Virus record (IMG/VR): IMGVR_UViG_3300043446_003193
Coordinates: 145,444-209,443 of that record
Length of the DNA: 64,000 nucleotides
Reading direction: 5' to 3' (one strand)
How positions within the stretch are numbered: the stretch's first letter is position 1; every line of letters begins with the position of its first letter. The notes beneath the pieces are model-generated. The model was not told the DNA's origin. It searched no databases and saw only the letters and a program-made list of their open reading frames with translations. Position numbers and translations under genes: made by a program. Below are positions 4,015 through 62,458 of this stretch, one piece after another.

Positions 4015-5640
4015 TTATAAAGTGTTTAAACCGTTTACGATAATCTTACCGTAGAATTCTGGTCTAACGATCTTCTTAGCGTAACGAGTCATAACTCCTC
4101 TTCTTGGAGTGAAGTTAGTTGGATCGTACACTAAAGGAGTCATAATCAATGGAACATATGGAGCGTATACAGCACCTGTCTCAAAGAAGTTAGAACCTTT
4201 AAATCCTAATAAGATAACGTTCTCAGTCATGTATGGGTTTTTGTAAACATCATATCTGTTAGAGATAGAACCGATGTTAGTTACACCTGCAGCAAATTGT
4301 AAAGCATCTTTACCAGGATTTGCAGAGAAACCGTTCATTGATTCCAAAATAGTTGCAACGTTTGGAGATACTACTACGAAGTTAGCACCACCTCTCATTG
4401 TTAACTGATGGATTTTGTTAGATACCTTTTGTAATTTGATACCTAAAGTTTGATACCAAGTACTCTTAGTGTATGCAGAAGCAGCTGCTGCGTTAGAATC
4501 TACCGCGAATGCTCCAGTTGCACTATTGTAATCGTATCCAACTCTTGCATCCCAATAATCAGTTGTGAATGCGTTTTGTTGTAACATTTCTAAGATTTCC
4601 AAATCAATTTCTAAAGAAATGTACTCAGATAACATTTGAGTTAACTCAGCTTCAGCGTCTACACTATGGTAAGCATTTAAGTCTTGAGCTAATTCAGGAG
4701 TCCAAATTGCTTTCAACTTACGAGTCTTAGCAACGATTGGTTCTGATTTCAATTCTAATTCAATTTCTGGAATGTCTAAGTTTGAACCTTTATCTTCAAA
4801 GTCACCTCTGTTTTCAGCAGATGGTTGCTTATGATAAGATAATGTAGCACCACCAGCACTTACACCACCTGCAGATCCTGTACCGTAGAATTCTACTGAA
4901 GTACCATTGATCTTAGTGTATTTAGGATAGTAGTTGTTAGCTGTGATAGAACCAGATTGTAAGATTTCAAATGCTCTTACACCGTTCCAATCAGCATCAG
5001 TTGGTAAAGTTACAGTTACTTTTTTGATACCACCAGCTGCTAAAGAAGCAGATAAGTCAGCGTCAAAATTGATATCAGCCCAAGATGCAGTTGCAACTGT
5101 TGCGTCTAACGCTGCTGATGTATCGTTGATTGTATAACCAAATCTTCCAGCTCCGTAAAGACCACCTTCAGCAACTTGAGTAGAACCCAATTTGTTACCG
5201 TGAGATGCTTCAGAGTTGTAAGTTAAGTTATCCTTACCGAAAGTACCACCTTTACCGAATAATGAATTACCGTTAAAGTCTGGGTTACCAGCTTGTGAAG
5301 TACCATATTTGAAGTCCATGTAGAAAATAAGACCTGAAGGTAAGTTCATAGGTTGTACTGAAACGAATTCTTTAGCTGCGATAGAACCGAAGATTCTTCT
5401 TACTAAAGGTAACGCAACACCAGCCCATTCTTCAGAACCTGCTGAAGTACCTGTTCTTGTAGCCTCATCCAATAATTGCTTAGCTTGGTTTTCTAACATT
5501 ACTGCCATACCATGCTTAGTAGTTTCTGAACCTACTCCTTCAAGTAAGCCAGTTTTTTCCCATTTGCTTTTCAAACCTCTAGTTTGCTCAAGCATTACGC
5601 TCTGTGGGTTAGCGCCTGTCATTAATTTTTTTAAGTCCAT
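4015..5640 (-). CDS. gp23: Major capsid protein, T4 gp23 family
   Basis: LPLVRR, VQPMNLPSGLIF, AKTRKLKA.WTPELAQDL.AYH, YAPYVPL, F.PRRGVMTRYA motifs; probable maturation site LLDE/A near residue 59. Confidence 0.97.
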   Translation of the reverse strand: MDLKKLMTGANPQSVMLEQTRGLKSKWEKTGLLEGVGSETTKHGMAVMLENQAKQLLDEATRTGTSAGSEEWAGVALPLVRRIFGSIAAKEFVSVQPMNLPSGLIFYMDFKYGTSQAGNPDFNGNSLFGKGGTFGKDNLTYNSEASHGNKLGSTQVAEGGLYGAGRFGYTINDTSAALDATVATASWADINFDADLSASLAAGGIKKVTVTLPTDADWNGVRAFEILQSGSITANNYYPKYTKINGTSVEFYGTGSAGGVSAGGATLSYHKQPSAENRGDFEDKGSNLDIPEIELELKSEPIVAKTRKLKAIWTPELAQDLNAYHSVDAEAELTQMLSEYISLEIDLEILEMLQQNAFTTDYWDARVGYDYNSATGAFAVDSNAAAASAYTKSTWYQTLGIKLQKVSNKIHQLTMRGGANFVVVSPNVATILESMNGFSANPGKDALQFAAGVTNIGSISNRYDVYKNPYMTENVILLGFKGSNFFETGAVYAPYVPLIMTPLVYDPTNFTPRRGVMTRYAKKIVRPEFYGKIIVNGLNTL

Positions 5641-5663
5641 TGTATGTACTTTTAATTGTTTGT

Positions 5664-6881
5664 TTATTTAATAATACCTGCTAATTTCTTAAATCTGTCA
5701 GAAAAATCAGCTGATTCAGCAATTACTTGCTTAGCTGCTGCTGGCTTAGTAGATTTTACTGCTTTGCTAGCGATTCCTTCAGAAATAGATTTTTTAGTAG
5801 ATTTGTTAGATGAAGAATATTTGAAATTCTCTGCTAATGTAGAGTAAACCAATTTAACTTCTCTAACTGATTTTGTTCTATCCAAAGTTTCAATCACTTT
5901 AACTTTTTGTTCGTTAGTCATGTTGTGTGCTCTGAATAATTTGTTAGCGAATAACAACTTAGCGTTCAATAAGTTCACTTCGTTGATTGTTTTTTGTAAA
6001 GACTTGATAGTTTTGTAAGCTTCGTTAAGTTCTTTTTCTTTTTCTTCTTCTTCAGCTTCGTCAACTTTCTCTTTATCGTCTTTCATATCCGCTTCCATTT
6101 CACGTAAGATTTCTTCTAAATCAACAACGTCTTTGTCATCTTCTTTAGATTCTTCTTCGTTGGTTACAACCACTTTAGGGTCTTCACCTTTGTCTGTACC
6201 TGCTTCAGAACCATCTGCTAAATTTTCGTTTTTAGCTTCTTCATCTTCTTCAGCTTCGTACATAGGTTTTTCTTCTTCTTCAGAATCTTCACCTTCTAAT
6301 TGAGCTTCTAATTCTCTGATGATAGCTTCTAAGTCCATGTCATCTTCTGTTTCTTCTTCTTCAGAACCAGTTACGTCATAGTCTTCACCATCTTCTTCTC
6401 CTGTCTCATCCGCACCCGCAGTAAATGCTGGTAATTCTTCTTCAGAATCTTCTCCTTCTAATTCTGCTAATCTAGCTTTTAATTGAGCGATTTCGTCTTG
6501 TTTTGCAACTTCGTCATCACCAGCTTGATCATCAGCGAAAGGATTTTCTTCTTCAGAGATATCTGCTACCTTTTTGAAATCATCAACTTGTGCACCTGGT
6601 TCGCCAGATGTTGTTTCAGTTGAACCTGCTTCAAATTCAGTATCAGCGTCTAATGTAGGATTAGATGTAGATGCACCAATGTTTGATGAATCTAATTCTT
6701 CGTCAACTTTTTCAGCTTCTTTATCTTCAGCTTCAGCTTCTGCTCTTAACTTTGCAGATAAGATAGATTGAAGTCTTGGAGTGAAAGCCTCTTCAAGTGC
6801 GATTTTTGCGTTTGCTAAAGCAGTTTCTTTTACAGCTTTGGCATCAGCGATTGCTTCTTTCAATAATTTTGAATTTGCCAT
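5664..6881 (-). CDS. Prohead core scaffolding protein (gp22-like)
   Basis: Very acidic E/D-rich coiled coil directly upstream of the capsid gene; C-terminal RFKKLAGI. Confidence 0.8.
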   Translation of the reverse strand: MANSKLLKEAIADAKAVKETALANAKIALEEAFTPRLQSILSAKLRAEAEAEDKEAEKVDEELDSSNIGASTSNPTLDADTEFEAGSTETTSGEPGAQVDDFKKVADISEEENPFADDQAGDDEVAKQDEIAQLKARLAELEGEDSEEELPAFTAGADETGEEDGEDYDVTGSEEEETEDDMDLEAIIRELEAQLEGEDSEEEEKPMYEAEEDEEAKNENLADGSEAGTDKGEDPKVVVTNEEESKEDDKDVVDLEEILREMEADMKDDKEKVDEAEEEEKEKELNEAYKTIKSLQKTINEVNLLNAKLLFANKLFRAHNMTNEQKVKVIETLDRTKSVREVKLVYSTLAENFKYSSSNKSTKKSISEGIASKAVKSTKPAAAKQVIAESADFSDRFKKLAGIIK

Positions 6882-7028
6882 CTTTTTTCCTTAAATTTTG
6901 TTGTGAAGTTATTCTTGTAGGGAACTCCAATGTAATTATGTTGATTGTTCGGTCACACCTTATAAGAGAAGGGTATTCATTAACCAACGATGTCTTGTAA
7001 TCTTATAATAAAAATAAGATATTTGAGA
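6882..7028 (-). other. Long (~145 nt) structured 5' leader of the scaffold-capsid operon with Shine-Dalgarno TAAGGA
   Basis: Unusually long intergenic gap; hairpins ATCTTAT/ATAAGAT (7000-7020) and GTTGGTT/AATCAAC enclosing TACCCTT/AAGGTG; AAGGA 6 nt before the ATG. Confidence 0.5.
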
Positions 7029-7036
7029 ATAAATAT
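7029..7036 (-). promoter_or_regulatory. Late-promoter-like motif ATATTTAT for the scaffold-capsid operon
   Basis: Same motif as upstream of other structural genes. Confidence 0.65.
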
Positions 7037-7046
7037 ATAAAATTTT

Positions 7047-7066
7047 TAGAAAACTAAAGAAAATTA
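7047..7066. repeat. Operator-like 2x10-bp direct repeat TAGAAAACTA-AAGAAAATTA
   Basis: 19/20 identical to 34131-34150 upstream of the RHH gene. Confidence 0.7.
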
Positions 7067-7243
7067 GTGATTATACTTATTTTTTCTTATAGTTTCTTCT
7101 TTTTGTAACCTTTTTTTAATAGAAGGTTTAGTAAAGTTCTTTCTTTCTCTAAGTTCTTCTATTTGTTTTATGGACTGAACTTTCTTTTTATATTCCTTTA
7201 ATGCCCACTCTATGTTTCCGTTTTTCACGTTAACTATTAACAT
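7064..7243 (-). CDS. rpsU: Phage-encoded 30S ribosomal protein bS21 (59 aa, absent from the ORF track)
   Basis: Manual translation MLIVNVKNGNIEWALKEYKKKVQSIKQIEELRERKNFTKPSIKKRLQKEETIRKNKYNH; NIE.ALK..K.K and LR.R..F.KPS..R are bS21 signatures; MLI start resembles Bacteroidota bS21. Confidence 0.92.
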   Translation of the reverse strand: MLIVNVKNGNIEWALKEYKKKVQSIKQIEELRERKNFTKPSIKKRLQKEETIRKNKYNH

Positions 7244-7249
7244 AACTAA

Positions 7250-7549
7250 TTAATATGGTGTTTGATATTCCAATTGTTTTTTTAATTCTCTTTCGTATTC
7301 CTTTTCAATTTTATCTAAATCATCTTTAGCAGATTTAATATCTTCTTGATGTTTTTTTAATTGATAAAGATATTGGTTTTTTCTATCTTCGTTTTGTTCA
7401 TCAAAATATGCTTTACTCATCATTTTTTGACGAGTTGTTAATCCTTCATATTTTCTTATAGCATCAATGTATGCAGATGATGCTTTTCTAAAACCGGCTC
7501 TTATTTTAACTGCTTCTTCTTTTAAAGGAATTAGATTTATTAGTTTCAT
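7250..7549 (-). CDS. Hypothetical, putative internal head protein
   Basis: N-terminal KLINLIPLKEE shared in part with 8346..8624; head module. Confidence 0.5.
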   Translation of the reverse strand: MKLINLIPLKEEAVKIRAGFRKASSAYIDAIRKYEGLTTRQKMMSKAYFDEQNEDRKNQYLYQLKKHQEDIKSAKDDLDKIEKEYERELKKQLEYQTPY

Positions 7550-7920
7550 TATTGTAAATTAACTAATTTATATTTTGTAGAATATAATAAAGTTACAATC
7601 GTATCAATATCGTTTTGTAACCAACTCATTTGTAACTTTTCATCTTTTCTTAATTTCTCAACTGCTTTACAAAGTTTTTCAAAATAAGAAATTATATTTT
7701 TGATATCATTGTTAGTATCAATACCACTTACTGGTTGAACTTTGATTAATCCGTACTGTCCTTGATATGCTTCCACTAATCCATCTACTAATCCACCAAT
7801 TGAATCGTAATATGTACCTAAAGCCAAATGAGCAGATAATGCACCAACACCTTTAACTCCCCAATGGAAAGCATGTGCTTGTGTTCTACTGTGTAATAAT
7901 AATGATGCTAATTGTTCCAT
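7549..7920 (-). CDS. Dps/ferritin-like protein
   Basis: H..HW.V.G......H..L..YY.....VD.LVE pattern of Dps-type ferroxidase ligands. Confidence 0.7.
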   Translation of the reverse strand: MEQLASLLLHSRTQAHAFHWGVKGVGALSAHLALGTYYDSIGGLVDGLVEAYQGQYGLIKVQPVSGIDTNNDIKNIISYFEKLCKAVEKLRKDEKLQMSWLQNDIDTIVTLLYSTKYKLVNLQ

Positions 7921-13051: not shown

Positions 13052-13083
13052 TGAAGATACGAAAAATAATTGGAATTACCAAG
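13052..13083 (-). promoter_or_regulatory. Bacteroidota sigma70-type promoter upstream of portal
   Basis: CTTG-N20-TATCTTCA, same architecture as six other copies. Confidence 0.5.
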
Positions 13084-30900: not shown

Positions 30901-33900
30901 CAGATGGAGATACTGCTACTAATACATTTGGTGTACCTGCTTTAGCTTTTGAATATGTTACTAATTTTACAAATGTACTATCACTTCCTCTACCATCTCT
31001 GTAAGTTACTTTTAAATTTATACTACCACTATCAGCGGATAACGCGGTTATAGAATAGTTGTTATTTGTAAGTACTGCTGTTACATTTGAAGATGATGAA
31101 ATACTTGCACTAAATTTATTGTTTCCAATTGTAGATGCGTATGAAATATCTTCACTTCCAACTTTTACTGATATAGAACCACTACTTGCTAAAAACCCAC
31201 CAAAAACAGTTCCACCAGAATATGCAGGAAATGTTGTATTTTCGTTTGATACTGTCACTGCAATTTGTGATTCAGCTATTACCGGAGTAATTGTAATTGT
31301 ATCACTATAAACTGCATTATTTAAATCATAAGCAGTAAATGTATATGTTGTTGCGCCAGATGAATATGAATAATCACTACCATTTATACTATATGATTGT
31401 ACACCGGTGGTATTATTGTTAGAACCAACGGTCAAAGCTGGTTTACTACTACCACTAGTTACAGTAATTTCATTTGTAGTACTTCCTAAATTATTTCTTT
31501 TTACATCAATTGTTATAGTTTGTCCAGATGGTGATAAACTCAAATCGGTCATTTTATAAAAAAACTGATTAGCGTTAGAAACTGCATTTAAGTTTTTACT
31601 CTTATCACCTTTTAATACACCTTCCAATTGTACCGAAGATGAATATCCTCCTTTATTAAAATAATAAGTTCCTTTATGTGTAAGTTGGGTAGGAGTAGCA
31701 TATGACCAAGATGCTACATTTGTACCTAGCATTGCAACATCGTGTTGATCATCTCCACTAAAAACACGATAAACAGACTCGGTAGATTTTCCTATATATT
31801 CGGTAGATATTAAAGCTAATTTTGGTAAATAAGAACCAGAAGTTATGTAAATACTACCAGAAACAATGTTATTTGTTAGCTTTATATCAATAAAATCATT
31901 AAGTTGTGCAGGAACATTATTATCGTCTGGATCATACACAAATTGATTTTTATTAGCAATTGCAATGAAATTTTGACCATCAATACCATCTGCACCAACA
32001 GCTCCTTGATCAACTCTATAAATGTTTACCAAATCTCTTACATCTTCGCAAGATGCCGTATATTGAACTCTACTAATTTTTGATGAAGATATTGATCCAG
32101 TAAAATTAGAAACCAAAAGAGTTGCGGATGTTTCCGTTACATTTGTTAATAAACCAGGATAAAAAGGTTCAGATGCATAAACCGATGGATTAATGTAATC
32201 ACCATTTGCATCAAATGCTGAAGAGTAGAATGTTACAGAACCGGTTAATCCTATTTTTGAAATATCAAAATTTATTGAAGATACTCCAATTGTTTCTCCT
32301 GAGCCAGAAAAACTAAATAGTGTATTATCTGGAGTTACTGTTAATGATTTTTGAACAATTGTATCTGTTCCACCAGTAAATGTAATTTCTTTTTCTAAAG
32401 TAACAGGTACATAATTGTTATTAATATCGTAAAATTCAAAACGAAAATCGTAAGTATCATTATTTACTTTAGTCGGAACATTTACATTTAGAGTAACTTC
32501 ATTAGGAGAAAAGTTTGTTTCTTGAGAAGCTCGTAAACTTATGTTTGATAAATACCATTCTCCTTGATGAATATTAAAAAATATTTGTCCCTGCCCATCA
32601 GTATCTGGTTTAAAATTTATTTGTTGTTTATCAAATCTTCTAAAAGATTCACTAACATTAAATTCACCTAAAAGTTTTCCATATCCAAGATCAGAGTCCT
32701 CAACTACGAATGCCGGTCCAACACCAAACACATTTAATTTTCCATAACCAAAAGAAGATGATTGCAATAAAAGACTGAAATCTAATTGATATTCAGTATT
32801 ACTTAGAAAATCAATATCATTGTGATTATAAAAAACTCTCTGTGGATGTTGTGTTGTATTTAAAGTATTATCGTCTTGTAGTTTTACTGAAGATGCTAAT
32901 ACTGAATCATTTTGTGTAGCAGTATAATATGTATTTTCTTCATGTTTTTTATATTTCCAAAAATCATCTATTATTTTTTGAGATGAAAATTGTCCTATTC
33001 TAACATTTACACTTCCACTATATGCATCAGTTTGAAATAGTTCATTTGATTCTAACTGAATATCTTCTAATAAACTATAATTTCCAATATCTGATTTTCT
33101 TTTACCAAATATTTTCAAACGATTTACATCACCACTAAATGTTTCCAAATTAGCTATTTTTATTTTAGCATAAGAAGAACTAATTGCAGAGTTTGTTAAA
33201 GTTACACTTTCGTTATATGGTAATGTAAATGATGCGGAAGAAAAATCAGTTACATATTGTACGGCGTTTGTGGCATTTGAAGATGTTTCATAATAAGGAA
33301 TTGTTGCTAATGCTTTTTTAGAATTAACAACATCTTTTATAATTGTAGAATATGATTGATTTAATCCAGTTATCGTAATTGTTTCACCTTCCATAGATGA
33401 TGAAAAATTACTTCCACTAATTTTTAATTCATAAATTGTATCACCTTTGAAAGTTCTAAAATTTGAACCAGATGTAGGTTGTACCGAAACACCATCAACA
33501 CTTCCACTAATAGTTACTCTATTTACAGTTCTATTGTATATTGGTAAAATTGTTTCAGTTATATCTACCGTCGGTCTACGATAGAAACGAATCTTTGTTG
33601 TATTTGCAATAATAGGATTTACATTCACTACTTTTTGCCATCTAACATTATATTGATTTTCCCAGTTTGAAGGGATTGGTGTTAGTAATCCATTAGCATC
33701 TTCATATTCACTTAATTCTCCTAATATAGTAATTGTACATGGACCAAATGCAGTATCTGGATAAACATATACTGCCACTACTTTTGAAGTTCCTTCATAA
33801 TATTCAGGAATACCTTCTCCTGGTTCGTGATAAATTACATTTCCTAATGCATCTTTAATTTCTATCTTTATAAGAGTATCGGCAACTAATTCAGGAGAAC

Positions 33901-34048
33901 CCTGAATTAAAAAAGAGTTTTTACCACCAGAAAAAGTTCCAGGTAGTTCGGTGATTCTAAAGTATCTACTATTTGGATCAGTATCTTCTAAAAATATATT
34001 ATATCTCTCTAAATTTTCTGGAAATAGAGTCTTTTTAAGAATGGCCAT
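27953..34048 (-). CDS. Long tail fibre with C-terminal peptidase S74 intramolecular chaperone
   Basis: SDIRLKKNI...PV.Y.W...GFIAQDV..IYP...YNELIP.MVKQIQ.L; GSIGGF/GTIGGW fibre repeats; short Gly-X-Y stretches. Confidence 0.88.
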   Translation of the reverse strand: MAILKKTLFPENLERYNIFLEDTDPNSRYFRITELPGTFSGGKNSFLIQGSPELVADTLIKIEIKDALGNVIYHEPGEGIPEYYEGTSKVVAVYVYPDTAFGPCTITILGELSEYEDANGLLTPIPSNWENQYNVRWQKVVNVNPIIANTTKIRFYRRPTVDITETILPIYNRTVNRVTISGSVDGVSVQPTSGSNFRTFKGDTIYELKISGSNFSSSMEGETITITGLNQSYSTIIKDVVNSKKALATIPYYETSSNATNAVQYVTDFSSASFTLPYNESVTLTNSAISSSYAKIKIANLETFSGDVNRLKIFGKRKSDIGNYSLLEDIQLESNELFQTDAYSGSVNVRIGQFSSQKIIDDFWKYKKHEENTYYTATQNDSVLASSVKLQDDNTLNTTQHPQRVFYNHNDIDFLSNTEYQLDFSLLLQSSSFGYGKLNVFGVGPAFVVEDSDLGYGKLLGEFNVSESFRRFDKQQINFKPDTDGQGQIFFNIHQGEWYLSNISLRASQETNFSPNEVTLNVNVPTKVNNDTYDFRFEFYDINNNYVPVTLEKEITFTGGTDTIVQKSLTVTPDNTLFSFSGSGETIGVSSINFDISKIGLTGSVTFYSSAFDANGDYINPSVYASEPFYPGLLTNVTETSATLLVSNFTGSISSSKISRVQYTASCEDVRDLVNIYRVDQGAVGADGIDGQNFIAIANKNQFVYDPDDNNVPAQLNDFIDIKLTNNIVSGSIYITSGSYLPKLALISTEYIGKSTESVYRVFSGDDQHDVAMLGTNVASWSYATPTQLTHKGTYYFNKGGYSSSVQLEGVLKGDKSKNLNAVSNANQFFYKMTDLSLSPSGQTITIDVKRNNLGSTTNEITVTSGSSKPALTVGSNNNTTGVQSYSINGSDYSYSSGATTYTFTAYDLNNAVYSDTITITPVIAESQIAVTVSNENTTFPAYSGGTVFGGFLASSGSISVKVGSEDISYASTIGNNKFSASISSSSNVTAVLTNNNYSITALSADSGSINLKVTYRDGRGSDSTFVKLVTYSKAKAGTPNVLVAVSPSAQSINANSKTSGSATPTALTITALESGTSRFTSIGTPTYTNGLAGTVSSNVITITSTASSITGSTAQVTIPVNYTDSEGTSGTKNVVATVSKALAAPPAVVVSIEKDGQTITKSTAGSYGTPSSFKLYVNEGGSAYAYDATSPYVIPSFRISSVTNGTNAGVDGDGYTTITPSTPSSTSGLIVSITGSYVDSEGTSTTFYKTHNVNVSSDGTDGNTGATGPGIVLRGEYAAGTTYYYTTVAGSSRRDAVYQSSGGVTKYYATLQQTTGNAPTDGASNSYWEYLGTQDFFVAAKIAIFDESYVKNTLNIGTNASGSAANITLAGGTTKPFVSIGQGVQSYGTNGIWLGISGSSFVPKVSFVSGSNYFKYDASATNIVDIGGAISATTLTAQTGSIGGFEIQAGKLIGGTATNGVILDGGQSRVIAGNSSGNSQAVMSIAGFHAGNTAFNSAPFRVDTAGALVASNANISGKITATDGTIGGWVIGQNSISKDKITLNAGGTGADNYIQITGESTYAGNRVLIHPGELLTTVPGAGSAITATTAQTYFSIGTSTPQNLYLYNVNGSTVATLSATSTNMYTSLSATSTYSINASVKYRIDLEWNNAPTMEYTYVASTGTFSTVDQAALNIAYHIKYNLSQDPTNLNYYSSITRGWIGGSAEAAVTAFISYFNTKKGTSYTTLSQMDGQYIDFYTSFDSVTGTATVTSTLSYGGTSIGSISRTVSPSTTSTQEEFADTSFQFITLGKTTNPLQISTTKSNGLVANYRKTRWHIDYYDSFTLFGFGTIPAGYAIWAESIGVDSYSPSSTNYYAKGLSLTATSLTKQVEISERGLQALFNSSQDSTGNFLKVEDIATPTAANANIKSAGYFAHYGELHVKGDIAGFSTSLSSDIRLKKNIVDIDETEIEDMDRLHPVAYSWNSDSENKKHYGFIAQDVEKIYPNLTDGRIMGEYLTIKYNELIPIMVKQIQNLKKEVNTLKQVLSNGK

Positions 34049-34060
34049 TAATCTTTTTAC

Positions 34061-34098
34061 ATAAATATTCTCAAAAAAATAATCTTCACATATTTATA
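34061..34098. promoter_or_regulatory. Back-to-back ATATTTAT(A) motifs for the divergent fibre operon (-, 34061-34068) and RHH gene (+, 34090-34098)
   Basis: Motif orientation follows gene orientation. Confidence 0.65.
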
Positions 34099-34100
34099 TA

Positions 34101-34150
34101 AAGAAAACTAATAAATACTATATTGTATTATAGAAAACTAAAGAAAACTA
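34101..34150 (+). repeat. Phased 10-bp direct repeats WAGAAAACTA (operator-like)
   Basis: Copies at 34101, 34131, 34141 plus a degenerate copy at 34111, all in 10-bp phase. Confidence 0.75.
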
Positions 34151-34158
34151 AATAAGTT

Positions 34159-34344
34159 ATGAAATACGCAATGTTGCAAATTAAAAAAGAAACCCATGAA
34201 CTTCTCAAATCATATTGTGAAGAACACGGGTTTAAAATGGGTAGTTTAGTTGAAAATCTAATCAAAAAACACGTTGGTGTTTCAAAACCTCAATCAGGTG
34301 TGTTGAAGGCTGATAAAGTTACTGTTAGAAATCAATCTTACTAA
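34159..34344 (+). CDS. Ribbon-helix-helix-like DNA-binding protein
   Basis: AMLQI strand + ETHELLKSYCEEHG helix + MGSLVENLIKKH helix; only credible plus-strand gene. Confidence 0.7.
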   Translation: MKYAMLQIKKETHELLKSYCEEHGFKMGSLVENLIKKHVGVSKPQSGVLKADKVTVRNQSY

Positions 34345-37300
34345 ATCCATTCTCTTTTTTTATTTCTATTAATCCATCTACGATATCTCTCATAGCATCT
34401 AAGTGAGAAATAACCCAAATGAAATCAAATTGAGTTTTAAGATATTGCATCATTCCGAATAGGGATGATAGATTATCACTATCTAATGTACCAAATCCCT
34501 CATCAATCACTAAGAAGTTTGGTCTAGGTAATCCACATATGTTTATCAATGCAACTCTGATTGCTAAACCACTAATAAACTTTTCCATACCACTACACAT
34601 TTCTAATGCCCATTCTTGATCCTCGTAAACTATCTTTGCGTTGATATTCTTGCCATCTACTTCCATTACAACCCCGAAATCAACTACTTGTCCTAAGATA
34701 TTATTTACTTCCGTTTGAATAACCGGTAATGCTTTAGAAATTAATTCATATGGAATACCATCTCTCTTTACAGCATCTAAATAATAGGTGTATAGGCGGT
34801 TCTTTTCTTCTAAATCCTTAACTTCATCCATTTTAGCTTTGATACCGTCTATAAACGATTGCAATTGAGAAATAGAACCATTTACAGAAGTTATATCTTT
34901 ATTAATTTGTTTAATTACTTTATCAACTTCTGATTTAAGAATTTCTTTTTCTTTAATTTGTTTTTCTAATTGTTTGTTTGTTTCAATTGTATCTTCGTTT
35001 TCGTAATATTTTTCAATATCTTCTTCAACTTTATCCAATTGAGTTTGTAATAATTCTTCTTTTGTTTCTAAACCTTTGTATTCCATTTCGGCTTTCTCTA
35101 ATATAACTTTTATTCTGGAATATCTTGTTTTGATTTCTTGTAATTCATTATATTGTTCTTCTACACCTTCCATAGTATCCAATGTTTGTTGAATACCTGT
35201 ACAATTAACCAATGCTTCTCTAAATTCTTCTTTCAATTGAGGTAATAATTCTTTTACTCTCATTGCATCTTTTACAAAAGTATTATCACAACAAAACTCA
35301 CAATTTGGGTCGTATTTATGATTATTCAAATGTGCAATCGTTTCTTCTGCAGAACTTACATGCACTTTTGCAATATCATAAGTTTTAGTTGCTTCGGTTA
35401 ATGCTTTTTGTTCTTTTTGATAATTTGAATATGCCGTTTCAATATCAACGCCGCCAAATGATTTCTTATCTTCTATTGATTGTGATAATTCATTAAGGGT
35501 ATTGGTATGATTTTCTATTTTAGTTTCAGTATTGGTATATTCCGTTTCTAAATCTTCAATTTGTTTTGTAATTAATTTTCTTTTATCTTCCAAAGTGGGT
35601 AAATCTAAATTAGAATCAATTGGTGCAAGTTGTCTTGTTAATCCTAACACCTCGTTCTCAATACTTTCTTTTATTTTTGCTTCAGAATTTAATTGTTGTT
35701 GTAATTCTTTTAATTCACCTTTTTTATATTTAATCTCAATACCTTTATTTGCCAATTCTGTTGTAAAATCAGTTTTCTTAAAATTTTTGATAAGAACACT
35801 TACTTCTCTAATATCTTCTACTGCTGTATCAAACAACTTATCAAAGATATTCAATCCCATAAATTGTGCCAATAAATCTTTTCTTTCACTTTGTGATTTA
35901 TCAATGAATAGTGCATTATTCCCTTGCAGAGATAATGCAGTTAATACGAAATCCTCATACTTACCAACATATTGTTCAATGATGGTGTTTGTATCTCTTC
36001 TTTCTGTTCCATTAAGTGAAGTTCTTTCATCTCCATCCATTTTATAGAACTCAACATCTACTTTTACATTCTTTCCTTTGTTGATTGTTTTAGCAGTTCT
36101 TTCAATAAAATATCTTTCACCATTAATATCAAATTCTAACTTACATTTGAAATCGGTTTTACGATTATTCATTATGTTTGCTGCTTTGAATGCTCTACTA
36201 CTCTTATCGTATAAACAAAATGAAATAGAGTCAAATAGAGATGATTTACCACTTGCATTTGGTGCAAATAATCCCATCAATCCGTTTAATTTACTGAAAT
36301 CAATAACATTGTCCTCACCATAGGAGAACATGTTACTAAACTCAAACTTTATAGGTTTCCATTGGATATTTCTTGCAACATCATCTAATACAATTCTACT
36401 ATTAATATCTCTATTGATTGTTTCCAATTCAGATAAATCTTTATCTGTCACAAATGGCATCATTCTCTTAACATAATCATGTATTAAAGAGTTTTGATGG
36501 TTTACATCTGTAATATCTTCAAAATCTAATTTGTTTTGTCTATTTCCGGTCTTTAATTTGGAAAGTGAATCCGTTCTAATGATTGTAAAATCTTCAAGTC
36601 CGTATCTCATCTTAATTTCTGTCAATACTTTCTTTGTATCGGCAGTATCGGTATTAGATAAACGAACTCTCAATCTTGCATTCTTTGGCATATTGTTTAC
36701 AACCGGAACTACACCATTATCTACATCCAAAGTATAATAACCATAATCGTTTGGTAAATCAACACTCTCATAAGTTAGAGTATCCATATCCCAAACTAAG
36801 AAACCATGTTTATCTAATGTTTCACCGAAGTTTTGTTGAACCAATGAACCAGCATAAACTACCTTACAACCTGCCGGACTAATCATCTCTTGTCTTTTAT
36901 GAATATCACCCAATAGAGCTAAATCATATCCATCAAATATATCGGTTGTAAAATGTCTACTACTAACCACATAACCCACATCCGTAATAGAATTATCCAC
37001 GGGGCCGTGGAATAATGCAATCTTTGTTTTTGCATCAATATCTTCTGCTTTAGGCCAATTATCTTTATTATCAAAAATAGAATAAACAGCGAATGCAGTA
37101 TCACCATATTTCCAAACTTGTGTATCTCTTAAATAATAAAAATTATCCAAATTCAATGCTTCTACAATTGGAGTAAGAACATCAATTCTATCCAAATTAT
37201 TCATATTACAATCGTGATTACCTGTAATAAGAATTGTAGGTGCTAATTTTGCACACTCCGTAAATAACCAACTAATCTCTCTAACTAATTCAGGAGACAT

Positions 37301-37471
37301 TTCCAATTTAGCATGAGCAATATCACCTGCTAAATAAATGATTGCATTTTCCGTTCCTCTATTACGGATTTCCTCAAACATTTTTTCAAATACTTGTCTA
37401 TACTCTTTGTGTCGTTTCACGTTACGGATATGTACGTCCGCAATATGGTAAATTGTTTTTAATTTACTCAT
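34325..37471 (-). CDS. Fused SbcD/Mre11 (gp47-like) nuclease - SbcC/Rad50 (gp46-like) ATPase
   Basis: ADVH, GDIAH, GNHD, FHG phosphoesterase motifs; FSNMFSYG, NASGKSS, CEFC hook, SGMEK, LVIDEGFGTLD, ISH. Confidence 0.93.
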   Translation of the reverse strand: MSKLKTIYHIADVHIRNVKRHKEYRQVFEKMFEEIRNRGTENAIIYLAGDIAHAKLEMSPELVREISWLFTECAKLAPTILITGNHDCNMNNLDRIDVLTPIVEALNLDNFYYLRDTQVWKYGDTAFAVYSIFDNKDNWPKAEDIDAKTKIALFHGPVDNSITDVGYVVSSRHFTTDIFDGYDLALLGDIHKRQEMISPAGCKVVYAGSLVQQNFGETLDKHGFLVWDMDTLTYESVDLPNDYGYYTLDVDNGVVPVVNNMPKNARLRVRLSNTDTADTKKVLTEIKMRYGLEDFTIIRTDSLSKLKTGNRQNKLDFEDITDVNHQNSLIHDYVKRMMPFVTDKDLSELETINRDINSRIVLDDVARNIQWKPIKFEFSNMFSYGEDNVIDFSKLNGLMGLFAPNASGKSSLFDSISFCLYDKSSRAFKAANIMNNRKTDFKCKLEFDINGERYFIERTAKTINKGKNVKVDVEFYKMDGDERTSLNGTERRDTNTIIEQYVGKYEDFVLTALSLQGNNALFIDKSQSERKDLLAQFMGLNIFDKLFDTAVEDIREVSVLIKNFKKTDFTTELANKGIEIKYKKGELKELQQQLNSEAKIKESIENEVLGLTRQLAPIDSNLDLPTLEDKRKLITKQIEDLETEYTNTETKIENHTNTLNELSQSIEDKKSFGGVDIETAYSNYQKEQKALTEATKTYDIAKVHVSSAEETIAHLNNHKYDPNCEFCCDNTFVKDAMRVKELLPQLKEEFREALVNCTGIQQTLDTMEGVEEQYNELQEIKTRYSRIKVILEKAEMEYKGLETKEELLQTQLDKVEEDIEKYYENEDTIETNKQLEKQIKEKEILKSEVDKVIKQINKDITSVNGSISQLQSFIDGIKAKMDEVKDLEEKNRLYTYYLDAVKRDGIPYELISKALPVIQTEVNNILGQVVDFGVVMEVDGKNINAKIVYEDQEWALEMCSGMEKFISGLAIRVALINICGLPRPNFLVIDEGFGTLDSDNLSSLFGMMQYLKTQFDFIWVISHLDAMRDIVDGLIEIKKENGFSKIDF

Positions 37472-38409
37472 AAACTATTTATTTTATTTAACAATAATTC
37501 TTCCGAAGTAAATTCTTTAGTTTTCTTTAGTTCTTCGTAGAATTTTTCATACCCCATATCGGCGGCATCTTTATCTTTTAAATACATCATTTTAACCTGT
37601 ATTCCATTCTTTCTAAAATACTCTGCTGCTTTCAATGCCTCACTTATCGCATCGTTATCTAATGAAATAATGATATCACTAACACCACTCATAAAGATTT
37701 TCTCAACTAATGATTTTGAAGGAAACTTACCTAATAGTGGAATGGCATTTCTTTTAATTGTAATTGCATCAAATACACCCTCACAAAGTATAATTGGTTC
37801 ATTCCAATTTACCTGAGAATCAAAACAAATTATATTTTTACTAATTGGTGGGTTTTTATATTTCATCTTCTCTTCTGGATAATAAGAACGAGAAACAAAA
37901 TAATTTAATGAACCATCGGAATTATAAGAAGGTATAATAACCCTTCTAGCGTATAATCCTTCCATACAATATCCTATATTATATTTTATAATATCTTTTT
38001 CAGTAATACCCCTTTCAGTAAGATAATGCATGGCATGTTTATATTCAGGATTAAACCCTTTAGGAACCTCATTAAGAGGTTTAAATTCTTTTGGTAGGGA
38101 AATGAACACCTTTGTATCGGCATCCTCTAATTGTGGGTTATATTGAGAATCTCCATATATTTCTCTAATAATAGAAATAGTCTTTCTATCAACATCCAAC
38201 TTTTTTAATAAGGATGTTAGTTTTTTACCACCACTATTACACGTCCAACAATGCCACTTTTGAGTTTCGGTATTAACTTGTAACTTTTGTTTGTGGTGAT
38301 TACAAAACGGGCAATAAAATGCCAATTCGTTACCCCTTAATACGGAATAACTACCCAACGCATTAGATAGCGTGGTCGTAACTATATTTTTATCAGTTTG
38401 CTTCAACAC
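37468..38409 (-). CDS. DNA primase (zinc finger + TOPRIM); start revised to GTG at 38409
   Basis: CPFC..H..K and WHCWTC zinc finger; LCEGVFDA, LDND, KDAAD; the track start at 38427 lies inside a promoter. Confidence 0.88.
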   Translation of the reverse strand: MLKQTDKNIVTTTLSNALGSYSVLRGNELAFYCPFCNHHKQKLQVNTETQKWHCWTCNSGGKKLTSLLKKLDVDRKTISIIREIYGDSQYNPQLEDADTKVFISLPKEFKPLNEVPKGFNPEYKHAMHYLTERGITEKDIIKYNIGYCMEGLYARRVIIPSYNSDGSLNYFVSRSYYPEEKMKYKNPPISKNIICFDSQVNWNEPIILCEGVFDAITIKRNAIPLLGKFPSKSLVEKIFMSGVSDIIISLDNDAISEALKAAEYFRKNGIQVKMMYLKDKDAADMGYEKFYEELKKTKEFTSEELLLNKINSL

Positions 38410-59888: not shown

Positions 59889-59920
59889 GTAATATACGAA
59901 AATAAATCTAAATTACCAAA
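59889..59920 (-). promoter_or_regulatory. Bacteroidota sigma70-type promoter (TTTG-N20-TATATTAC), 4 nt before the uvsE ATG
   Basis: Same architecture as the other copies. Confidence 0.72.
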
Positions 59921-61246: not shown

Positions 61247-61278
61247 GTAATATACGAAAAATAACTGAATTAACCAAC
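61247..61278 (-). promoter_or_regulatory. Bacteroidota sigma70-type promoter (GTTG-N20-TATATTAC) abutting the terminator
   Basis: Same architecture as the other copies. Confidence 0.55.
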
Positions 61279-62426: not shown

Positions 62427-62458
62427 CTAATATACGAAAAATTTTTGATATTACCAAA
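62427..62458 (-). promoter_or_regulatory. Bacteroidota sigma70-type promoter (TTTG-N20-TATATTAG)
   Basis: Same architecture as the other copies. Confidence 0.72.

What the first reader, a model, noticed from the sequence alone, without database searches (positions are those of the whole stretch)
34101..34344. Lone RHH regulator whose operator-like repeat recurs 27 kb away at the capsid-operon promoter
Seen: the only plus-strand gene encodes an RHH-like protein. Between its promoter motif and ATG lie 10-bp-phased repeats (AAGAAAACTA 34101, degenerate 34111, TAGAAAACTA 34131, AAGAAAACTA 34141). TAGAAAACTAAAGAAAACTA (34131-34150) matches 7047-7066 at 19/20, and that copy sits 10 bp upstream of the scaffold-capsid late motif, overlapping the bS21 stop. 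Established: RHH proteins bind tandem repeats cooperatively and often autoregulate. Inference: a small circuit with autorepression (sites downstream of its own promoter) and control of the capsid operon, and perhaps the divergent fibre operon (sites upstream of those promoters). I know of no such layer in T4 late transcription.
Basis: partly seen in the sequence, partly recalled or inferred. Interest (0 to 1): 0.8.

Follow-up and report, generated by a model that had tools for sequence, protein, structure and literature searches.

The report
Phage RHH regulator with conserved operator boxes
A small DNA-binding protein of an uncultured freshwater T4-like phage sits behind a set of 10-bp-spaced sequence boxes, and the same boxes recur, in relatives too, just upstream of the promoter of the capsid genes; this looks like a simple regulatory circuit but no binding has been shown.

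Summary
The boxes lie at the stated coordinates. The 20-mer 34131-34150 matches 7047-7066 at 19/20, against 0.12 chance hits expected.

Both sites are conserved in relatives:
- About 75 loci that carry bS21 keep the double box 10 bp upstream of the scaffold/capsid promoter motif.
- Two clades of the regulator gene, only 55% identical in their core, keep the same consensus (TAGAAAACTAAAGAAAACTA) between their own promoter and start codon.
- The spacing between boxes is exactly 20, 30 or 40 bp in 53 distinct sequences.

The 61-aa protein is a ribbon-helix-helix (RHH) protein, judged from a PHROG Arc-like match, remote homologues in RHH Pfam families, and an AlphaFold model whose best PDB matches are almost all RHH proteins.

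Two cultured relatives lack both the gene and the box at the orthologous promoter.

- The promoter-like motif of this phage is ATATTTAT(A/T) on the gene strand, not T4's TATAAATA.
- The fibre promoter is at 34060-34068.

That the RHH protein binds these boxes is inferred, and the sign of regulation at the capsid promoter is unknown. I file this as a new member of a known kind of system (RHH regulator plus repeated operator) in an unusual setting. Interest is moderate.

The parts
34159..34344 (+). 61-aa RHH (Arc/CopG-like) regulator gene, the only + strand gene in the window. Its 3' end overlaps the convergent 1048-aa ORF by 20 bp.
   Evidence: ORF list. phrog_3180 Arc-like repressor, E 4.8e-6. 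PF10723 in 34/34 homologues, below the curated cutoff. Remote homologues hit RHH_5, Omega_Repress and ParG. The AF2 model has an extended stretch 1-9, helices 10-23 and 27-39, and pLDDT 84-91 over residues 1-40. The Foldseek top hits are VapB, Arc, NikR, CopG and AvtR.
34090..34098 (+). Promoter-like motif ATATTTATA of the RHH gene
   Evidence: This is the only + strand copy among 16 exact ATATTTATW in the window. The other 15 are on the gene (-) strand, mostly in short intergenic gaps before ORF starts. It is conserved in relatives.
34101..34110 (+). Box 1 (AAGAAAACTA), starting 3 nt after the RHH promoter motif
   Evidence: The block ATATTTATATAAAGAAAACTAAT is conserved at 90% or more in 69 distinct relatives.
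34111..34130 (+). Two degenerate 10-bp spacer units. Their sequence varies and their number differs among relatives, but their length is kept.
   Evidence: The spacing from box 1 to the proximal box is 20, 30 or 40 bp in 14, 29 and 10 distinct sequences, and never out of phase.
34131..34150 (+). Double box TAGAAAACTAAAGAAAACTA, 8 nt before the RHH ATG
   Evidence: The consensus is identical in RHH clade 1 (36 distinct sequences), clade 2 (19) and the capsid site (22).
34060..34068 (-). Promoter-like motif ATATTTATG of the divergent 2031-aa tail-fibre-like gene, 11 nt before its ATG at 34048
   Evidence: The ATAAATAT block is conserved in relatives. The fibre-like ORF has a C-terminal Peptidase_S74 chaperone domain, E 9e-17.
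7047..7066 (+). Double box upstream of the scaffold/capsid operon. It overlaps the bS21 stop codon. On the transcribed (-) strand orientation it reads TAATTTTCTTTAGTTTTCTA.
   Evidence: It is conserved in about 75 of 78 bS21 loci with a fixed 10-bp gap to the motif, even where the bS21 C-terminus and stop codon differ. It is present in the 10 contigs known to carry both loci.
7028..7036 (-). Promoter-like motif ATATTTATT of the scaffold/major-capsid operon
   Evidence: The same motif precedes the scaffold gene in Flavobacterium phage immuto and Microcystis phage Mel-JY01. Metatranscriptome contigs cover the capsid gene, the scaffold gene and the leader up to the bin 6876-6999. Depth then drops to 0 in 7000-7123 and to about 0 over bS21.
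6882..7022 (-). Conserved, structured leader of about 140 nt on the scaffold/capsid mRNA. It has a 5' hairpin at 7000-7020, a stem GTTGATT/AATCAAC with a nested hairpin, and a third hairpin.
   Evidence: Compensatory changes are visible in the raw sequences. RNAalifold gives 21 pairs, 3 of them with double changes. There is no Rfam match.
4015..6881 (-). Candidate target operon: a 405-aa acidic scaffold-like gene (5664-6881) and the gp23-type major capsid gene (4015-5640)
   Evidence: PF07068 Gp23, E 1e-77. ORFs.
7064..7243 (-). Phage ribosomal protein bS21 gene. Its stop codon lies inside the capsid-site box.
   Evidence: PF01165, E 5.5e-13.
37516..37532 (-). Possible third site: an exact 17-mer of the box inside the primase 3' end, 44 nt before the ATG of the fused Mre11/Rad50-like gene
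   Evidence: It is kept in 42 loci but broken by synonymous or amino-acid changes in others. It is built from the rare codons CTA (6% of Leu codons) and AAG (15% of Lys codons).

Best explanation
The WAGAAAACTA boxes are operator subsites for the phage's own RHH protein.

Model:
- RHH dimers bind successive boxes on one face of the DNA helix, one box per turn.
- At the regulator's own promoter the array begins 3 nt after the promoter motif and runs to the start codon, so bound protein would block initiation or elongation (autorepression).
- The same double box sits 10 bp upstream of the promoter motif of the scaffold/capsid operon. There bound protein would occupy roughly the -20 to -45 region and either hinder or assist RNA polymerase.
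- The divergent fibre promoter, 32 bp beyond box 1, may be affected as well.

Shown: the boxes, their phasing, their conservation at both promoters, the RHH fold, and the position of the capsid transcription unit.

Inferred: that this protein binds them, and the direction of the effect.
For: 1. Specificity. The double box with up to 3 mismatches occurs only at the two loci in 64 kb. In 1.15 Mb of relatives' DNA within 10 kb of the gene, the 16-mer core with up to 1 mismatch occurs only at the gene's own leader and at the primase 3' end. Of 45 IMG/VR 16-mer hits that map to this window, 44 fall on the two sites.

2. Conservation. The capsid-site box is kept in about 75 bS21 loci at a fixed 10-bp distance from the motif. 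The leader boxes are kept in two RHH clades with 55% core identity. All three contexts give the same consensus.

3. Phasing. The spacing between boxes is 20, 30 or 40 bp only, while the spacer sequence drifts. The distance from the proximal box to the ATG varies from 13 to 16. This points to a function at the DNA level on one helix face.

4. Link to the promoter. In L325 a 198-aa gene is inserted between the array and the RHH gene, and the array stays with the promoter.

5. Link to the protein. The N-terminal strand residues Y3, M5, Q7 and I8 are invariant or nearly so across both clades, matching the unchanged box.

6. Co-occurrence. Both sites are present on 10 contigs that span both loci. 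Flavobacterium phage immuto and Microcystis phage Mel-JY01 have the same capsid promoter motif but no box there. They also have no RHH homologue, even at E up to 10.

7. Transcription unit. RNA-derived contigs place the 5' boundary of the capsid unit just downstream of the motif.
Against: - No binding data exist.
- The link between protein and box rests on position and co-occurrence, and the two negative genomes are distant relatives, so they count as few independent events.
- The box is not palindromic, whereas many RHH operators are. Omega and ParG do bind direct repeats (from my own knowledge).
- The relatives are fairly close to one another. Third codon positions of the gene are also 80-90% conserved, so conservation within clade 1 alone is weak evidence.
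- Only 64 kb of the 209-kb contig could be scanned, so the full set of sites is unknown.
- Phased A-tracts could act as intrinsically bent promoter DNA without any dedicated protein.
Confidence: 0.6

Rival explanations
1. The boxes are a real promoter-associated DNA element that is read by something else. That could be another phage or host factor, the phage-modified RNA polymerase itself (an UP-element or -35-like signal), or simply intrinsic bending by A-tracts phased at 10 bp. The RHH gene merely happens to lie next to one copy.
For: Both sites abut promoter-like motifs. In relative L208 a single box lies 3 nt upstream of the motif before the terminase operon, which suggests a general association with late promoters. 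The units are A-tracts spaced one helical turn apart. In T4, gp33 lies close to DNA at -39/-35 of late promoters (PMC2988020).
Against: Only 2 of about 17 promoter-like motifs in the window carry boxes, counting the fibre variant. The non-A positions (C, T and G of CTAAAG) are conserved at 90% or more, which pure bending would not require. At the RHH gene the array is downstream of the motif and in the opposite orientation relative to transcription, which is unlike an upstream promoter element. The box is absent from the orthologous promoter in two phages that lack the RHH gene.
Confidence: 0.27
2. The leader repeats act in the RNA, as an A-rich, unstructured translation-initiation region of the kind used by Bacteroidota (which do not use Shine-Dalgarno pairing). 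The capsid-site copy is then unrelated.
For: The array ends at the start codon and is A-rich. The host is probably a member of the Bacteroidota (capsid relatives; PMC9723584 and PMC9976891).
Against: At the capsid site the same sequence lies on the other strand and upstream of the transcription unit. The strict 10-bp phasing between boxes, with a variable distance to the ATG, has no RNA rationale. In L325 the array serves a different downstream gene.
Confidence: 0.06
3. The match is chance similarity or a relic of a duplicated segment, with no function.
For: The genome is about 30% G+C, and A-rich 10-mers are common. The 16-mer turns up by chance in many unrelated phage contigs.
Against: Shuffles and simulations give 0.07-0.12 expected hits. 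No similarity extends beyond the box, so it is not a recent duplication. The box is conserved at both places across clades.
Confidence: 0.02

Closest known systems
Omega repressor of plasmid pSM19035 (and ParG of TP228): RHH regulators that bind arrays of short repeats at several promoters
   Same: Both are small RHH proteins. Both have non-palindromic short repeats, two or more contiguous units, arrays of variable length, sites at the regulator's own promoter and at other promoters, and repeats used in either orientation relative to transcription. Remote homologues of the phage protein hit PF07764 Omega_Repress (7 members) and PF09274 ParG (3 members).
   Different: The unit here is 10 bp (one helical turn) rather than 7 bp. 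The element is a lytic-type T4-like phage, not a plasmid. The targets are a virion structural operon, not copy-number, partition or toxin genes. The comparison of binding behaviour rests on my own knowledge and was not tested.
Arc and Mnt repressors of Salmonella phage P22 (immI region)
   Same: Both are phage-encoded RHH proteins of about 50-80 aa that bind as dimers on adjacent subsites about one helical turn apart and regulate their own transcription. Arc is among the best structural matches (rmsd 1.2-1.8 A over about 40 residues), and the PHROG match is to an Arc-like repressor.
   Different: Arc and Mnt operators are pseudo-palindromic and control the antirepressor in a temperate phage. 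Here the repeats are direct, number up to five units, and are linked to a capsid operon. No significant sequence match to any PDB chain was found.
CopG/RepB-type plasmid copy-number repressors (PF10723, PF01402)
   Same: PF10723 is the best Pfam match, found in all 34 close homologues. CopG oligomerises along DNA on one face and represses its own promoter (from my own knowledge).
   Different: The score is below Pfam's curated cutoff (18.7 against 21 bits). No replication gene is co-transcribed.
T4 late transcription (gp55, gp33 and the gp45 sliding clamp)
   Same: Both have a short AT-rich motif before structural genes, a gp23-type capsid, a prohead protease, and T4-type terminase and portal genes.
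   Different: The motif is ATATTTATA, not TATAAATA. The review read (PMC2988020) mentions no repressor, and its only sequence-specific recognition is inferred for gp55 itself. A site-specific regulator at a late promoter would be an added layer. Homologues of gp55, gp33 and gp45 were not looked for.

Membership tests
Ribbon-helix-helix (Arc/MetJ/CopG) superfamily | Fold with an N-terminal beta-strand followed by two helices | tested here: met
   With 95 diverse sequences, AF2 gives an extended stretch 1-9 and helices 10-23 and 27-39, with pLDDT 84-91. The Foldseek PDB top hits are almost all RHH proteins (VapB, Arc, NikR, MazE-mt9, AvtR, CopG, AmrZ), with probability 0.8-0.97, rmsd 1.2-2.1 A and weak E-values of 0.25-3. 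A shallow-alignment model was uninformative.
Ribbon-helix-helix (Arc/MetJ/CopG) superfamily | Sequence match to a curated RHH family | tested here: inconclusive
   The protein itself scores 18.7 bits on PF10723, below the cutoff of 21, and E 4.8e-6 on phrog_3180 Arc-like repressor. By transitivity, profile hits at E up to 1e-5 match RHH_5 (15 members, best 7e-8), Omega_Repress (7), ParG (3), 56B_RHH, MatP_C and RHH_7. The language-model neighbours are RHH clusters.
Ribbon-helix-helix (Arc/MetJ/CopG) superfamily | Dimer with an antiparallel two-stranded sheet inserted in the major groove | not testable with these tools
   Only single chains can be modelled here.
Autoregulated RHH repressor with repeated operator | Two or more repeats about one helical turn apart that overlap or follow the regulator's own promoter | tested here: met
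   Box 1 starts 3 nt after the motif, and the double box lies 8 nt before the ATG. The phase of 20, 30 or 40 bp is kept in 53 distinct sequences.
Autoregulated RHH repressor with repeated operator | The protein binds the repeats and lowers its own transcription | not testable with these tools
   Needs EMSA or footprinting and a reporter assay.
Type II toxin-antitoxin RHH antitoxin | Co-transcribed toxin gene next to the RHH gene | tested here: not met
   There is no co-directional partner. The neighbours are a divergent fibre gene and a convergent Mre11/Rad50-like gene. The gene inserted in L325 lies upstream, is 198 aa long, and was not tested against any family.
T4-type late promoter | TATAAATA on the non-template strand upstream of late genes | tested here: not met
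   The recurrent motif in gene orientation is ATATTTAT(A/T). Of 16 copies, 15 are on the gene strand and one precedes the only + strand gene.
T4-type late promoter | Phage-encoded gp55, gp33 and gp45 homologues | not tested
   They were not searched for. Only 64 kb of the 209-kb contig was available.

The most novel reading that the evidence does not exclude
A site-specific RHH regulator is wired into the late, structural-gene transcription of a T4-like phage. It holds its own level steady by autorepression and gates the scaffold/capsid operon through a double operator placed where T4's clamp and gp33 co-activator dock. The same control region also holds a phage bS21 gene and a structured mRNA leader. 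That would be a layer of late-gene control not described for T4-type phages.
Probability: 0.4. Interest if true: 0.62.

Novelty: new member of a known kind. Interest (0 to 1): 0.45.

Why it matters
- T4-type late transcription is taught as lacking site-specific regulators. A conserved operator at the capsid promoter would show that some members of this large, environmentally abundant phage group add one.
- The group consists of freshwater phages that carry ribosomal protein bS21 and probably infect Bacteroidota.
- The circuit is small enough to test directly: one 61-aa protein and two short DNA sites.
- It could serve as a compact regulatory part.
- The work also gives a promoter-motif map for phages that have no cultured representative.

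Tried and rejected
Searches that led nowhere:
- Megablast of 33000-38000 against GenBank phages found no match.
- tblastn of both RHH variants against GenBank phages found no homologue, even at E up to 10. No annotated complete genome was therefore available for a genome-wide census.
- A profile search of PDB sequences gave only spurious SUMO matches.
- The first AF2 model, from 34 close homologues, merged the strand into helix 1, and Foldseek on it was meaningless.
More than half of its hits were chance matches in coding DNA of unrelated AT-rich phages.
- Rfam gave no hit in the whole window at gathering thresholds, nor in the capsid control region at E up to 10 beyond noise.
- No RNA run was listed for the RHH region, and the single read-laying run went to the capsid region. 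Expression and the 5' end of the RHH mRNA were therefore not examined.
- My leader-motif heuristic failed on the diverse capsid relatives. I replaced it with a plain box scan.

Ideas rejected:
- A second fibre promoter formed by the double box, 10 nt, and AGTATTTAT on the - strand at 34120..34112. The arrangement is not kept in relatives with 3 or 4 units.
- A weak capsid core promoter that needs an activator. Once aligned properly, the common variant differs from the consensus by one base only.
- L160 as an example of bS21 without a box. It is not syntenic.
- Other single-unit hits (28, 805, 18525, 20408, 28370, 35573, 57069). None lies within 100 nt of a promoter-like motif, and their number fits chance.

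Full report
**What is there.**
- The window is the last 64 kb of a 209-kb IMG/VR contig from a freshwater metagenome (L001 and L081 are 100% matches).
- Almost every gene is on the - strand.
- Genes identified: a gp23-type major capsid protein, a portal, a T4-type large terminase, a prohead protease, a DnaG-type primase, a fused Mre11/Rad50-like nuclease, and a ribosomal protein bS21.
- The nearest cultured relatives by capsid protein are Microcystis phage Mel-JY01 (55%) and Flavobacterium phage immuto (53%).
- The group matches the bS21-encoding freshwater phages of PMC9723584. That paper does not contain the words promoter, motif, regulator or repressor.

- The boxes are at the stated coordinates, and the 20-mer recurs at 7047-7066 with one mismatch.
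- Chance expectation is 0.07-0.12 hits.
- The 61-aa ORF is the only free-standing + strand gene.

**Promoter motif.** I listed the sequence upstream of every - strand ORF.
- The recurrent motif in gene orientation is ATATTTAT(A/T).
- Of 16 exact copies, 15 are on the - strand, mostly in short gaps 3-26 nt before start codons.
- The single + strand copy (34090-34098) precedes the single + strand gene.
- The total number of copies is not above chance. The strand and position bias is what marks it as a signal.
- It differs from T4's TATAAATA.
- The fibre gene has the variant ATATTTATG at 34068..34060. The scaffold/capsid operon has ATATTTATT at 7036..7028.
- A second motif class, TTTTCGTATMTT, occurs 4 times against 0.09 expected. 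All copies are on the gene strand, and the three whose surroundings I read lie in intergenic gaps.

**Geometry.**
- At the RHH gene, box 1 starts 3 nt after the motif. Two degenerate units follow. The double box then ends 8 nt before the ATG.
- At the capsid operon, the double box lies upstream of the motif with a 10-bp gap. Its T-rich strand points in the direction of transcription, so the orientation relative to transcription is opposite at the two sites.
- The two divergent motifs at the RHH locus are 21 bp apart. The array therefore lies 32-90 bp upstream of the fibre motif.

**Relatives.**
- The gene has 166 protein clusters in the large database and at least 152 IMG/VR stretches.
- In 69 distinct upstream sequences, the conserved blocks are the two motifs, box 1 and the proximal double box, while the sequence between them drifts.
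- The distance between box 1 and the proximal box is exactly 20, 30 or 40 bp (14, 29 and 10 sequences). The distance from the proximal box to the ATG varies from 13 to 16.
- A second clade has a 57-aa protein with 55% identity over the 38-residue core and sits at the same place between the fibre and nuclease genes. Its leader carries two or three tandem units ending at the ATG.
- In L325 a 198-aa gene has been inserted between the array and the RHH gene, and the array remains at the promoter.
- At the capsid site, about 75 of 78 bS21 loci keep the double box with the same 10-bp gap. Most keep the perfect 20-mer, even where the bS21 C-terminus and stop codon differ.
- More distant loci keep it too. 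L177 and L262 have a forward box some 15 nt upstream of the usual reverse-orientation box.
- The consensus is the same in all three contexts.
- Ten contigs hold both sites.

**Specificity.**
- In 1.15 Mb around the gene in 78 relatives, the 16-mer core with up to 1 mismatch is found only at the gene's own leader and at the primase 3' end.
- Of 45 IMG/VR hits that map to the window, 44 map to the two sites.
- The primase-end copy is an exact 17-mer in the window. It is built from the rare codons CTA and AAG, but it is broken in a fair share of relatives. It also disappears where the primase is not adjacent. I treat it as a possible, non-essential third site.
- In L208, a relative with 68% terminase identity, one box lies 3 nt upstream of the motif of the gene before the terminase. 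Targets may therefore differ between lineages.

**Absence together.**
- Flavobacterium phage immuto and Microcystis phage Mel-JY01 have the same motif before the scaffold gene, followed by a hairpin or a related leader. Neither has a box upstream.
- Neither has a homologue of either RHH variant at E up to 10.
- Among 80 diverse capsid relatives, only 4 have the box at that promoter.
- This fits a link between gene and box, but it amounts to few independent events.

**The protein.**
- The PHROG match is to an Arc-like repressor at E 4.8e-6.
- PF10723 matches every close homologue, but below Pfam's cutoff.
- A profile search of 1.8 billion representatives found 319 relatives. Of the 95 aligned and scanned, members match RHH_5, Omega_Repress, ParG and other RHH families.
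- With this deeper alignment, AF2 gives an extended N-terminus and two helices at pLDDT 84-91, with a disordered tail.
- The PDB matches are almost all RHH proteins at 1.2-2.1 A rmsd.
- Y3, M5, Q7 and I8 of the presumed DNA-reading strand are invariant or nearly invariant across both clades.

**Transcription.**
- Contigs from four freshwater and riverine metatranscriptomes cover the capsid gene, the scaffold gene and the leader up to about 6975-6999.
- Depth falls to zero in 7000-7123 and to about zero over bS21.
- The near-silent bS21 stretch argues that the signal is RNA. The boundary fits a start just downstream of the motif.
- Caveats: these are relatives' contigs laid at 85% likeness or more, and the first hairpin varies between strains. 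The boundary is therefore approximate.

**Mechanism.**
- Best reading (about 0.6): the RHH protein binds the boxes cooperatively, one dimer per unit on one helix face. It represses itself, and it acts on the capsid promoter from about -20 to -45.
- The sign at the capsid promoter is open. In T4, gp33 and the clamp lie near -35/-39 without reading sequence (PMC2988020). A protein bound there could either block or replace that contact.
- Main rival (about 0.27): the boxes are read by another factor or act as bent promoter DNA.
- An RNA-level role (0.06) and chance (0.02) are unlikely.

**Comparison and novelty.**
- In behaviour, the closest systems are Omega and ParG (arrays of short direct repeats at several promoters) and P22 Arc/Mnt (phage RHH autoregulators).
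- The fold test is met. Pfam family membership is sub-threshold for the protein itself. Binding cannot be tested here.
- This is a new member of a known kind of system in a new setting, not a new kind of system.

Noticed in passing
window 6882-7022 (- strand); L081-L157, L171, L215: The scaffold/capsid mRNA has a conserved, structured leader of about 140 nt. A hairpin right after the promoter (7000-7020) shows many compensatory changes: CTTAT/ATAAG, CTCAT/ATGAG, TCCAT/ATGGA, CCCAT/ATGGG. A stem GTTGATT/AATCAAC encloses a second hairpin, and there is a third hairpin, TGGAGTT/AACTTCA. A related leader start (AATGAATAC...) is present in Microcystis phage Mel-JY01. No Rfam family matches.
   Followed up: partly
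window 6883-6900 (- strand) and relatives: A Shine-Dalgarno-like TAAGGA(G/A) precedes the scaffold ATG, directly downstream of the phage bS21 gene. The likely hosts (Bacteroidota) do not normally use SD pairing because bS21 helps to sequester the anti-SD (PMC9976891, abstract). This may bear on the role of phage bS21.
   Followed up: no
window 3942, 9566, 11257, 14161, 17122, 21228, 39112, 40085, 42029, 47101, 52942, 53690, 56825, 61196 (all - strand): The promoter-like motif ATATTTAT(A/T) is strictly strand-biased and mostly intergenic, sometimes only 3-6 nt before the annotated ATG. That would imply very short or absent leaders, or misplaced start codons.
   Followed up: partly
window 13054-13065, 59891-59902, 61249-61260, 62429-62440 (- strand): A second promoter-like motif, TTTTCGTATMTT, occurs 4 times against 0.09 expected. 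Two copies are preceded by TTTGGTAAT. It lies before the portal gene and genes near 59-62 kb, and may be an early or host-type promoter class.
   Followed up: partly
window 34325-37471 (- strand): A single 1048-aa ORF fuses an Mre11-like metallophosphatase N-terminus with a Rad50/SbcC-like ATPase (T4 gp47 and gp46 in one protein). Its last 20 bp overlap the end of the convergent RHH gene.
   Followed up: partly
L325:4178-4774: In one relative a 198-aa gene (not tested against any family) is inserted exactly between the box array and the RHH start codon, duplicating the short junction AAATAAGTT-ATG. Downstream of the RHH gene a 236-aa gene takes the place of the nuclease gene.
   Followed up: partly
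L208:2313-2352: In a relative with 68% terminase identity, a single box core lies 3 nt upstream of an ATATTTATA motif before the gene that precedes the large terminase. This suggests lineage-specific extra targets.
   Followed up: partly
window 7124-7600 compared with 4024-6999: In four metatranscriptomes, contigs over bS21 and the genes upstream are almost absent, while the scaffold and capsid genes are deep. The runs were chosen by the capsid gene, so this is only a hint about the relative expression of bS21.
   Followed up: no
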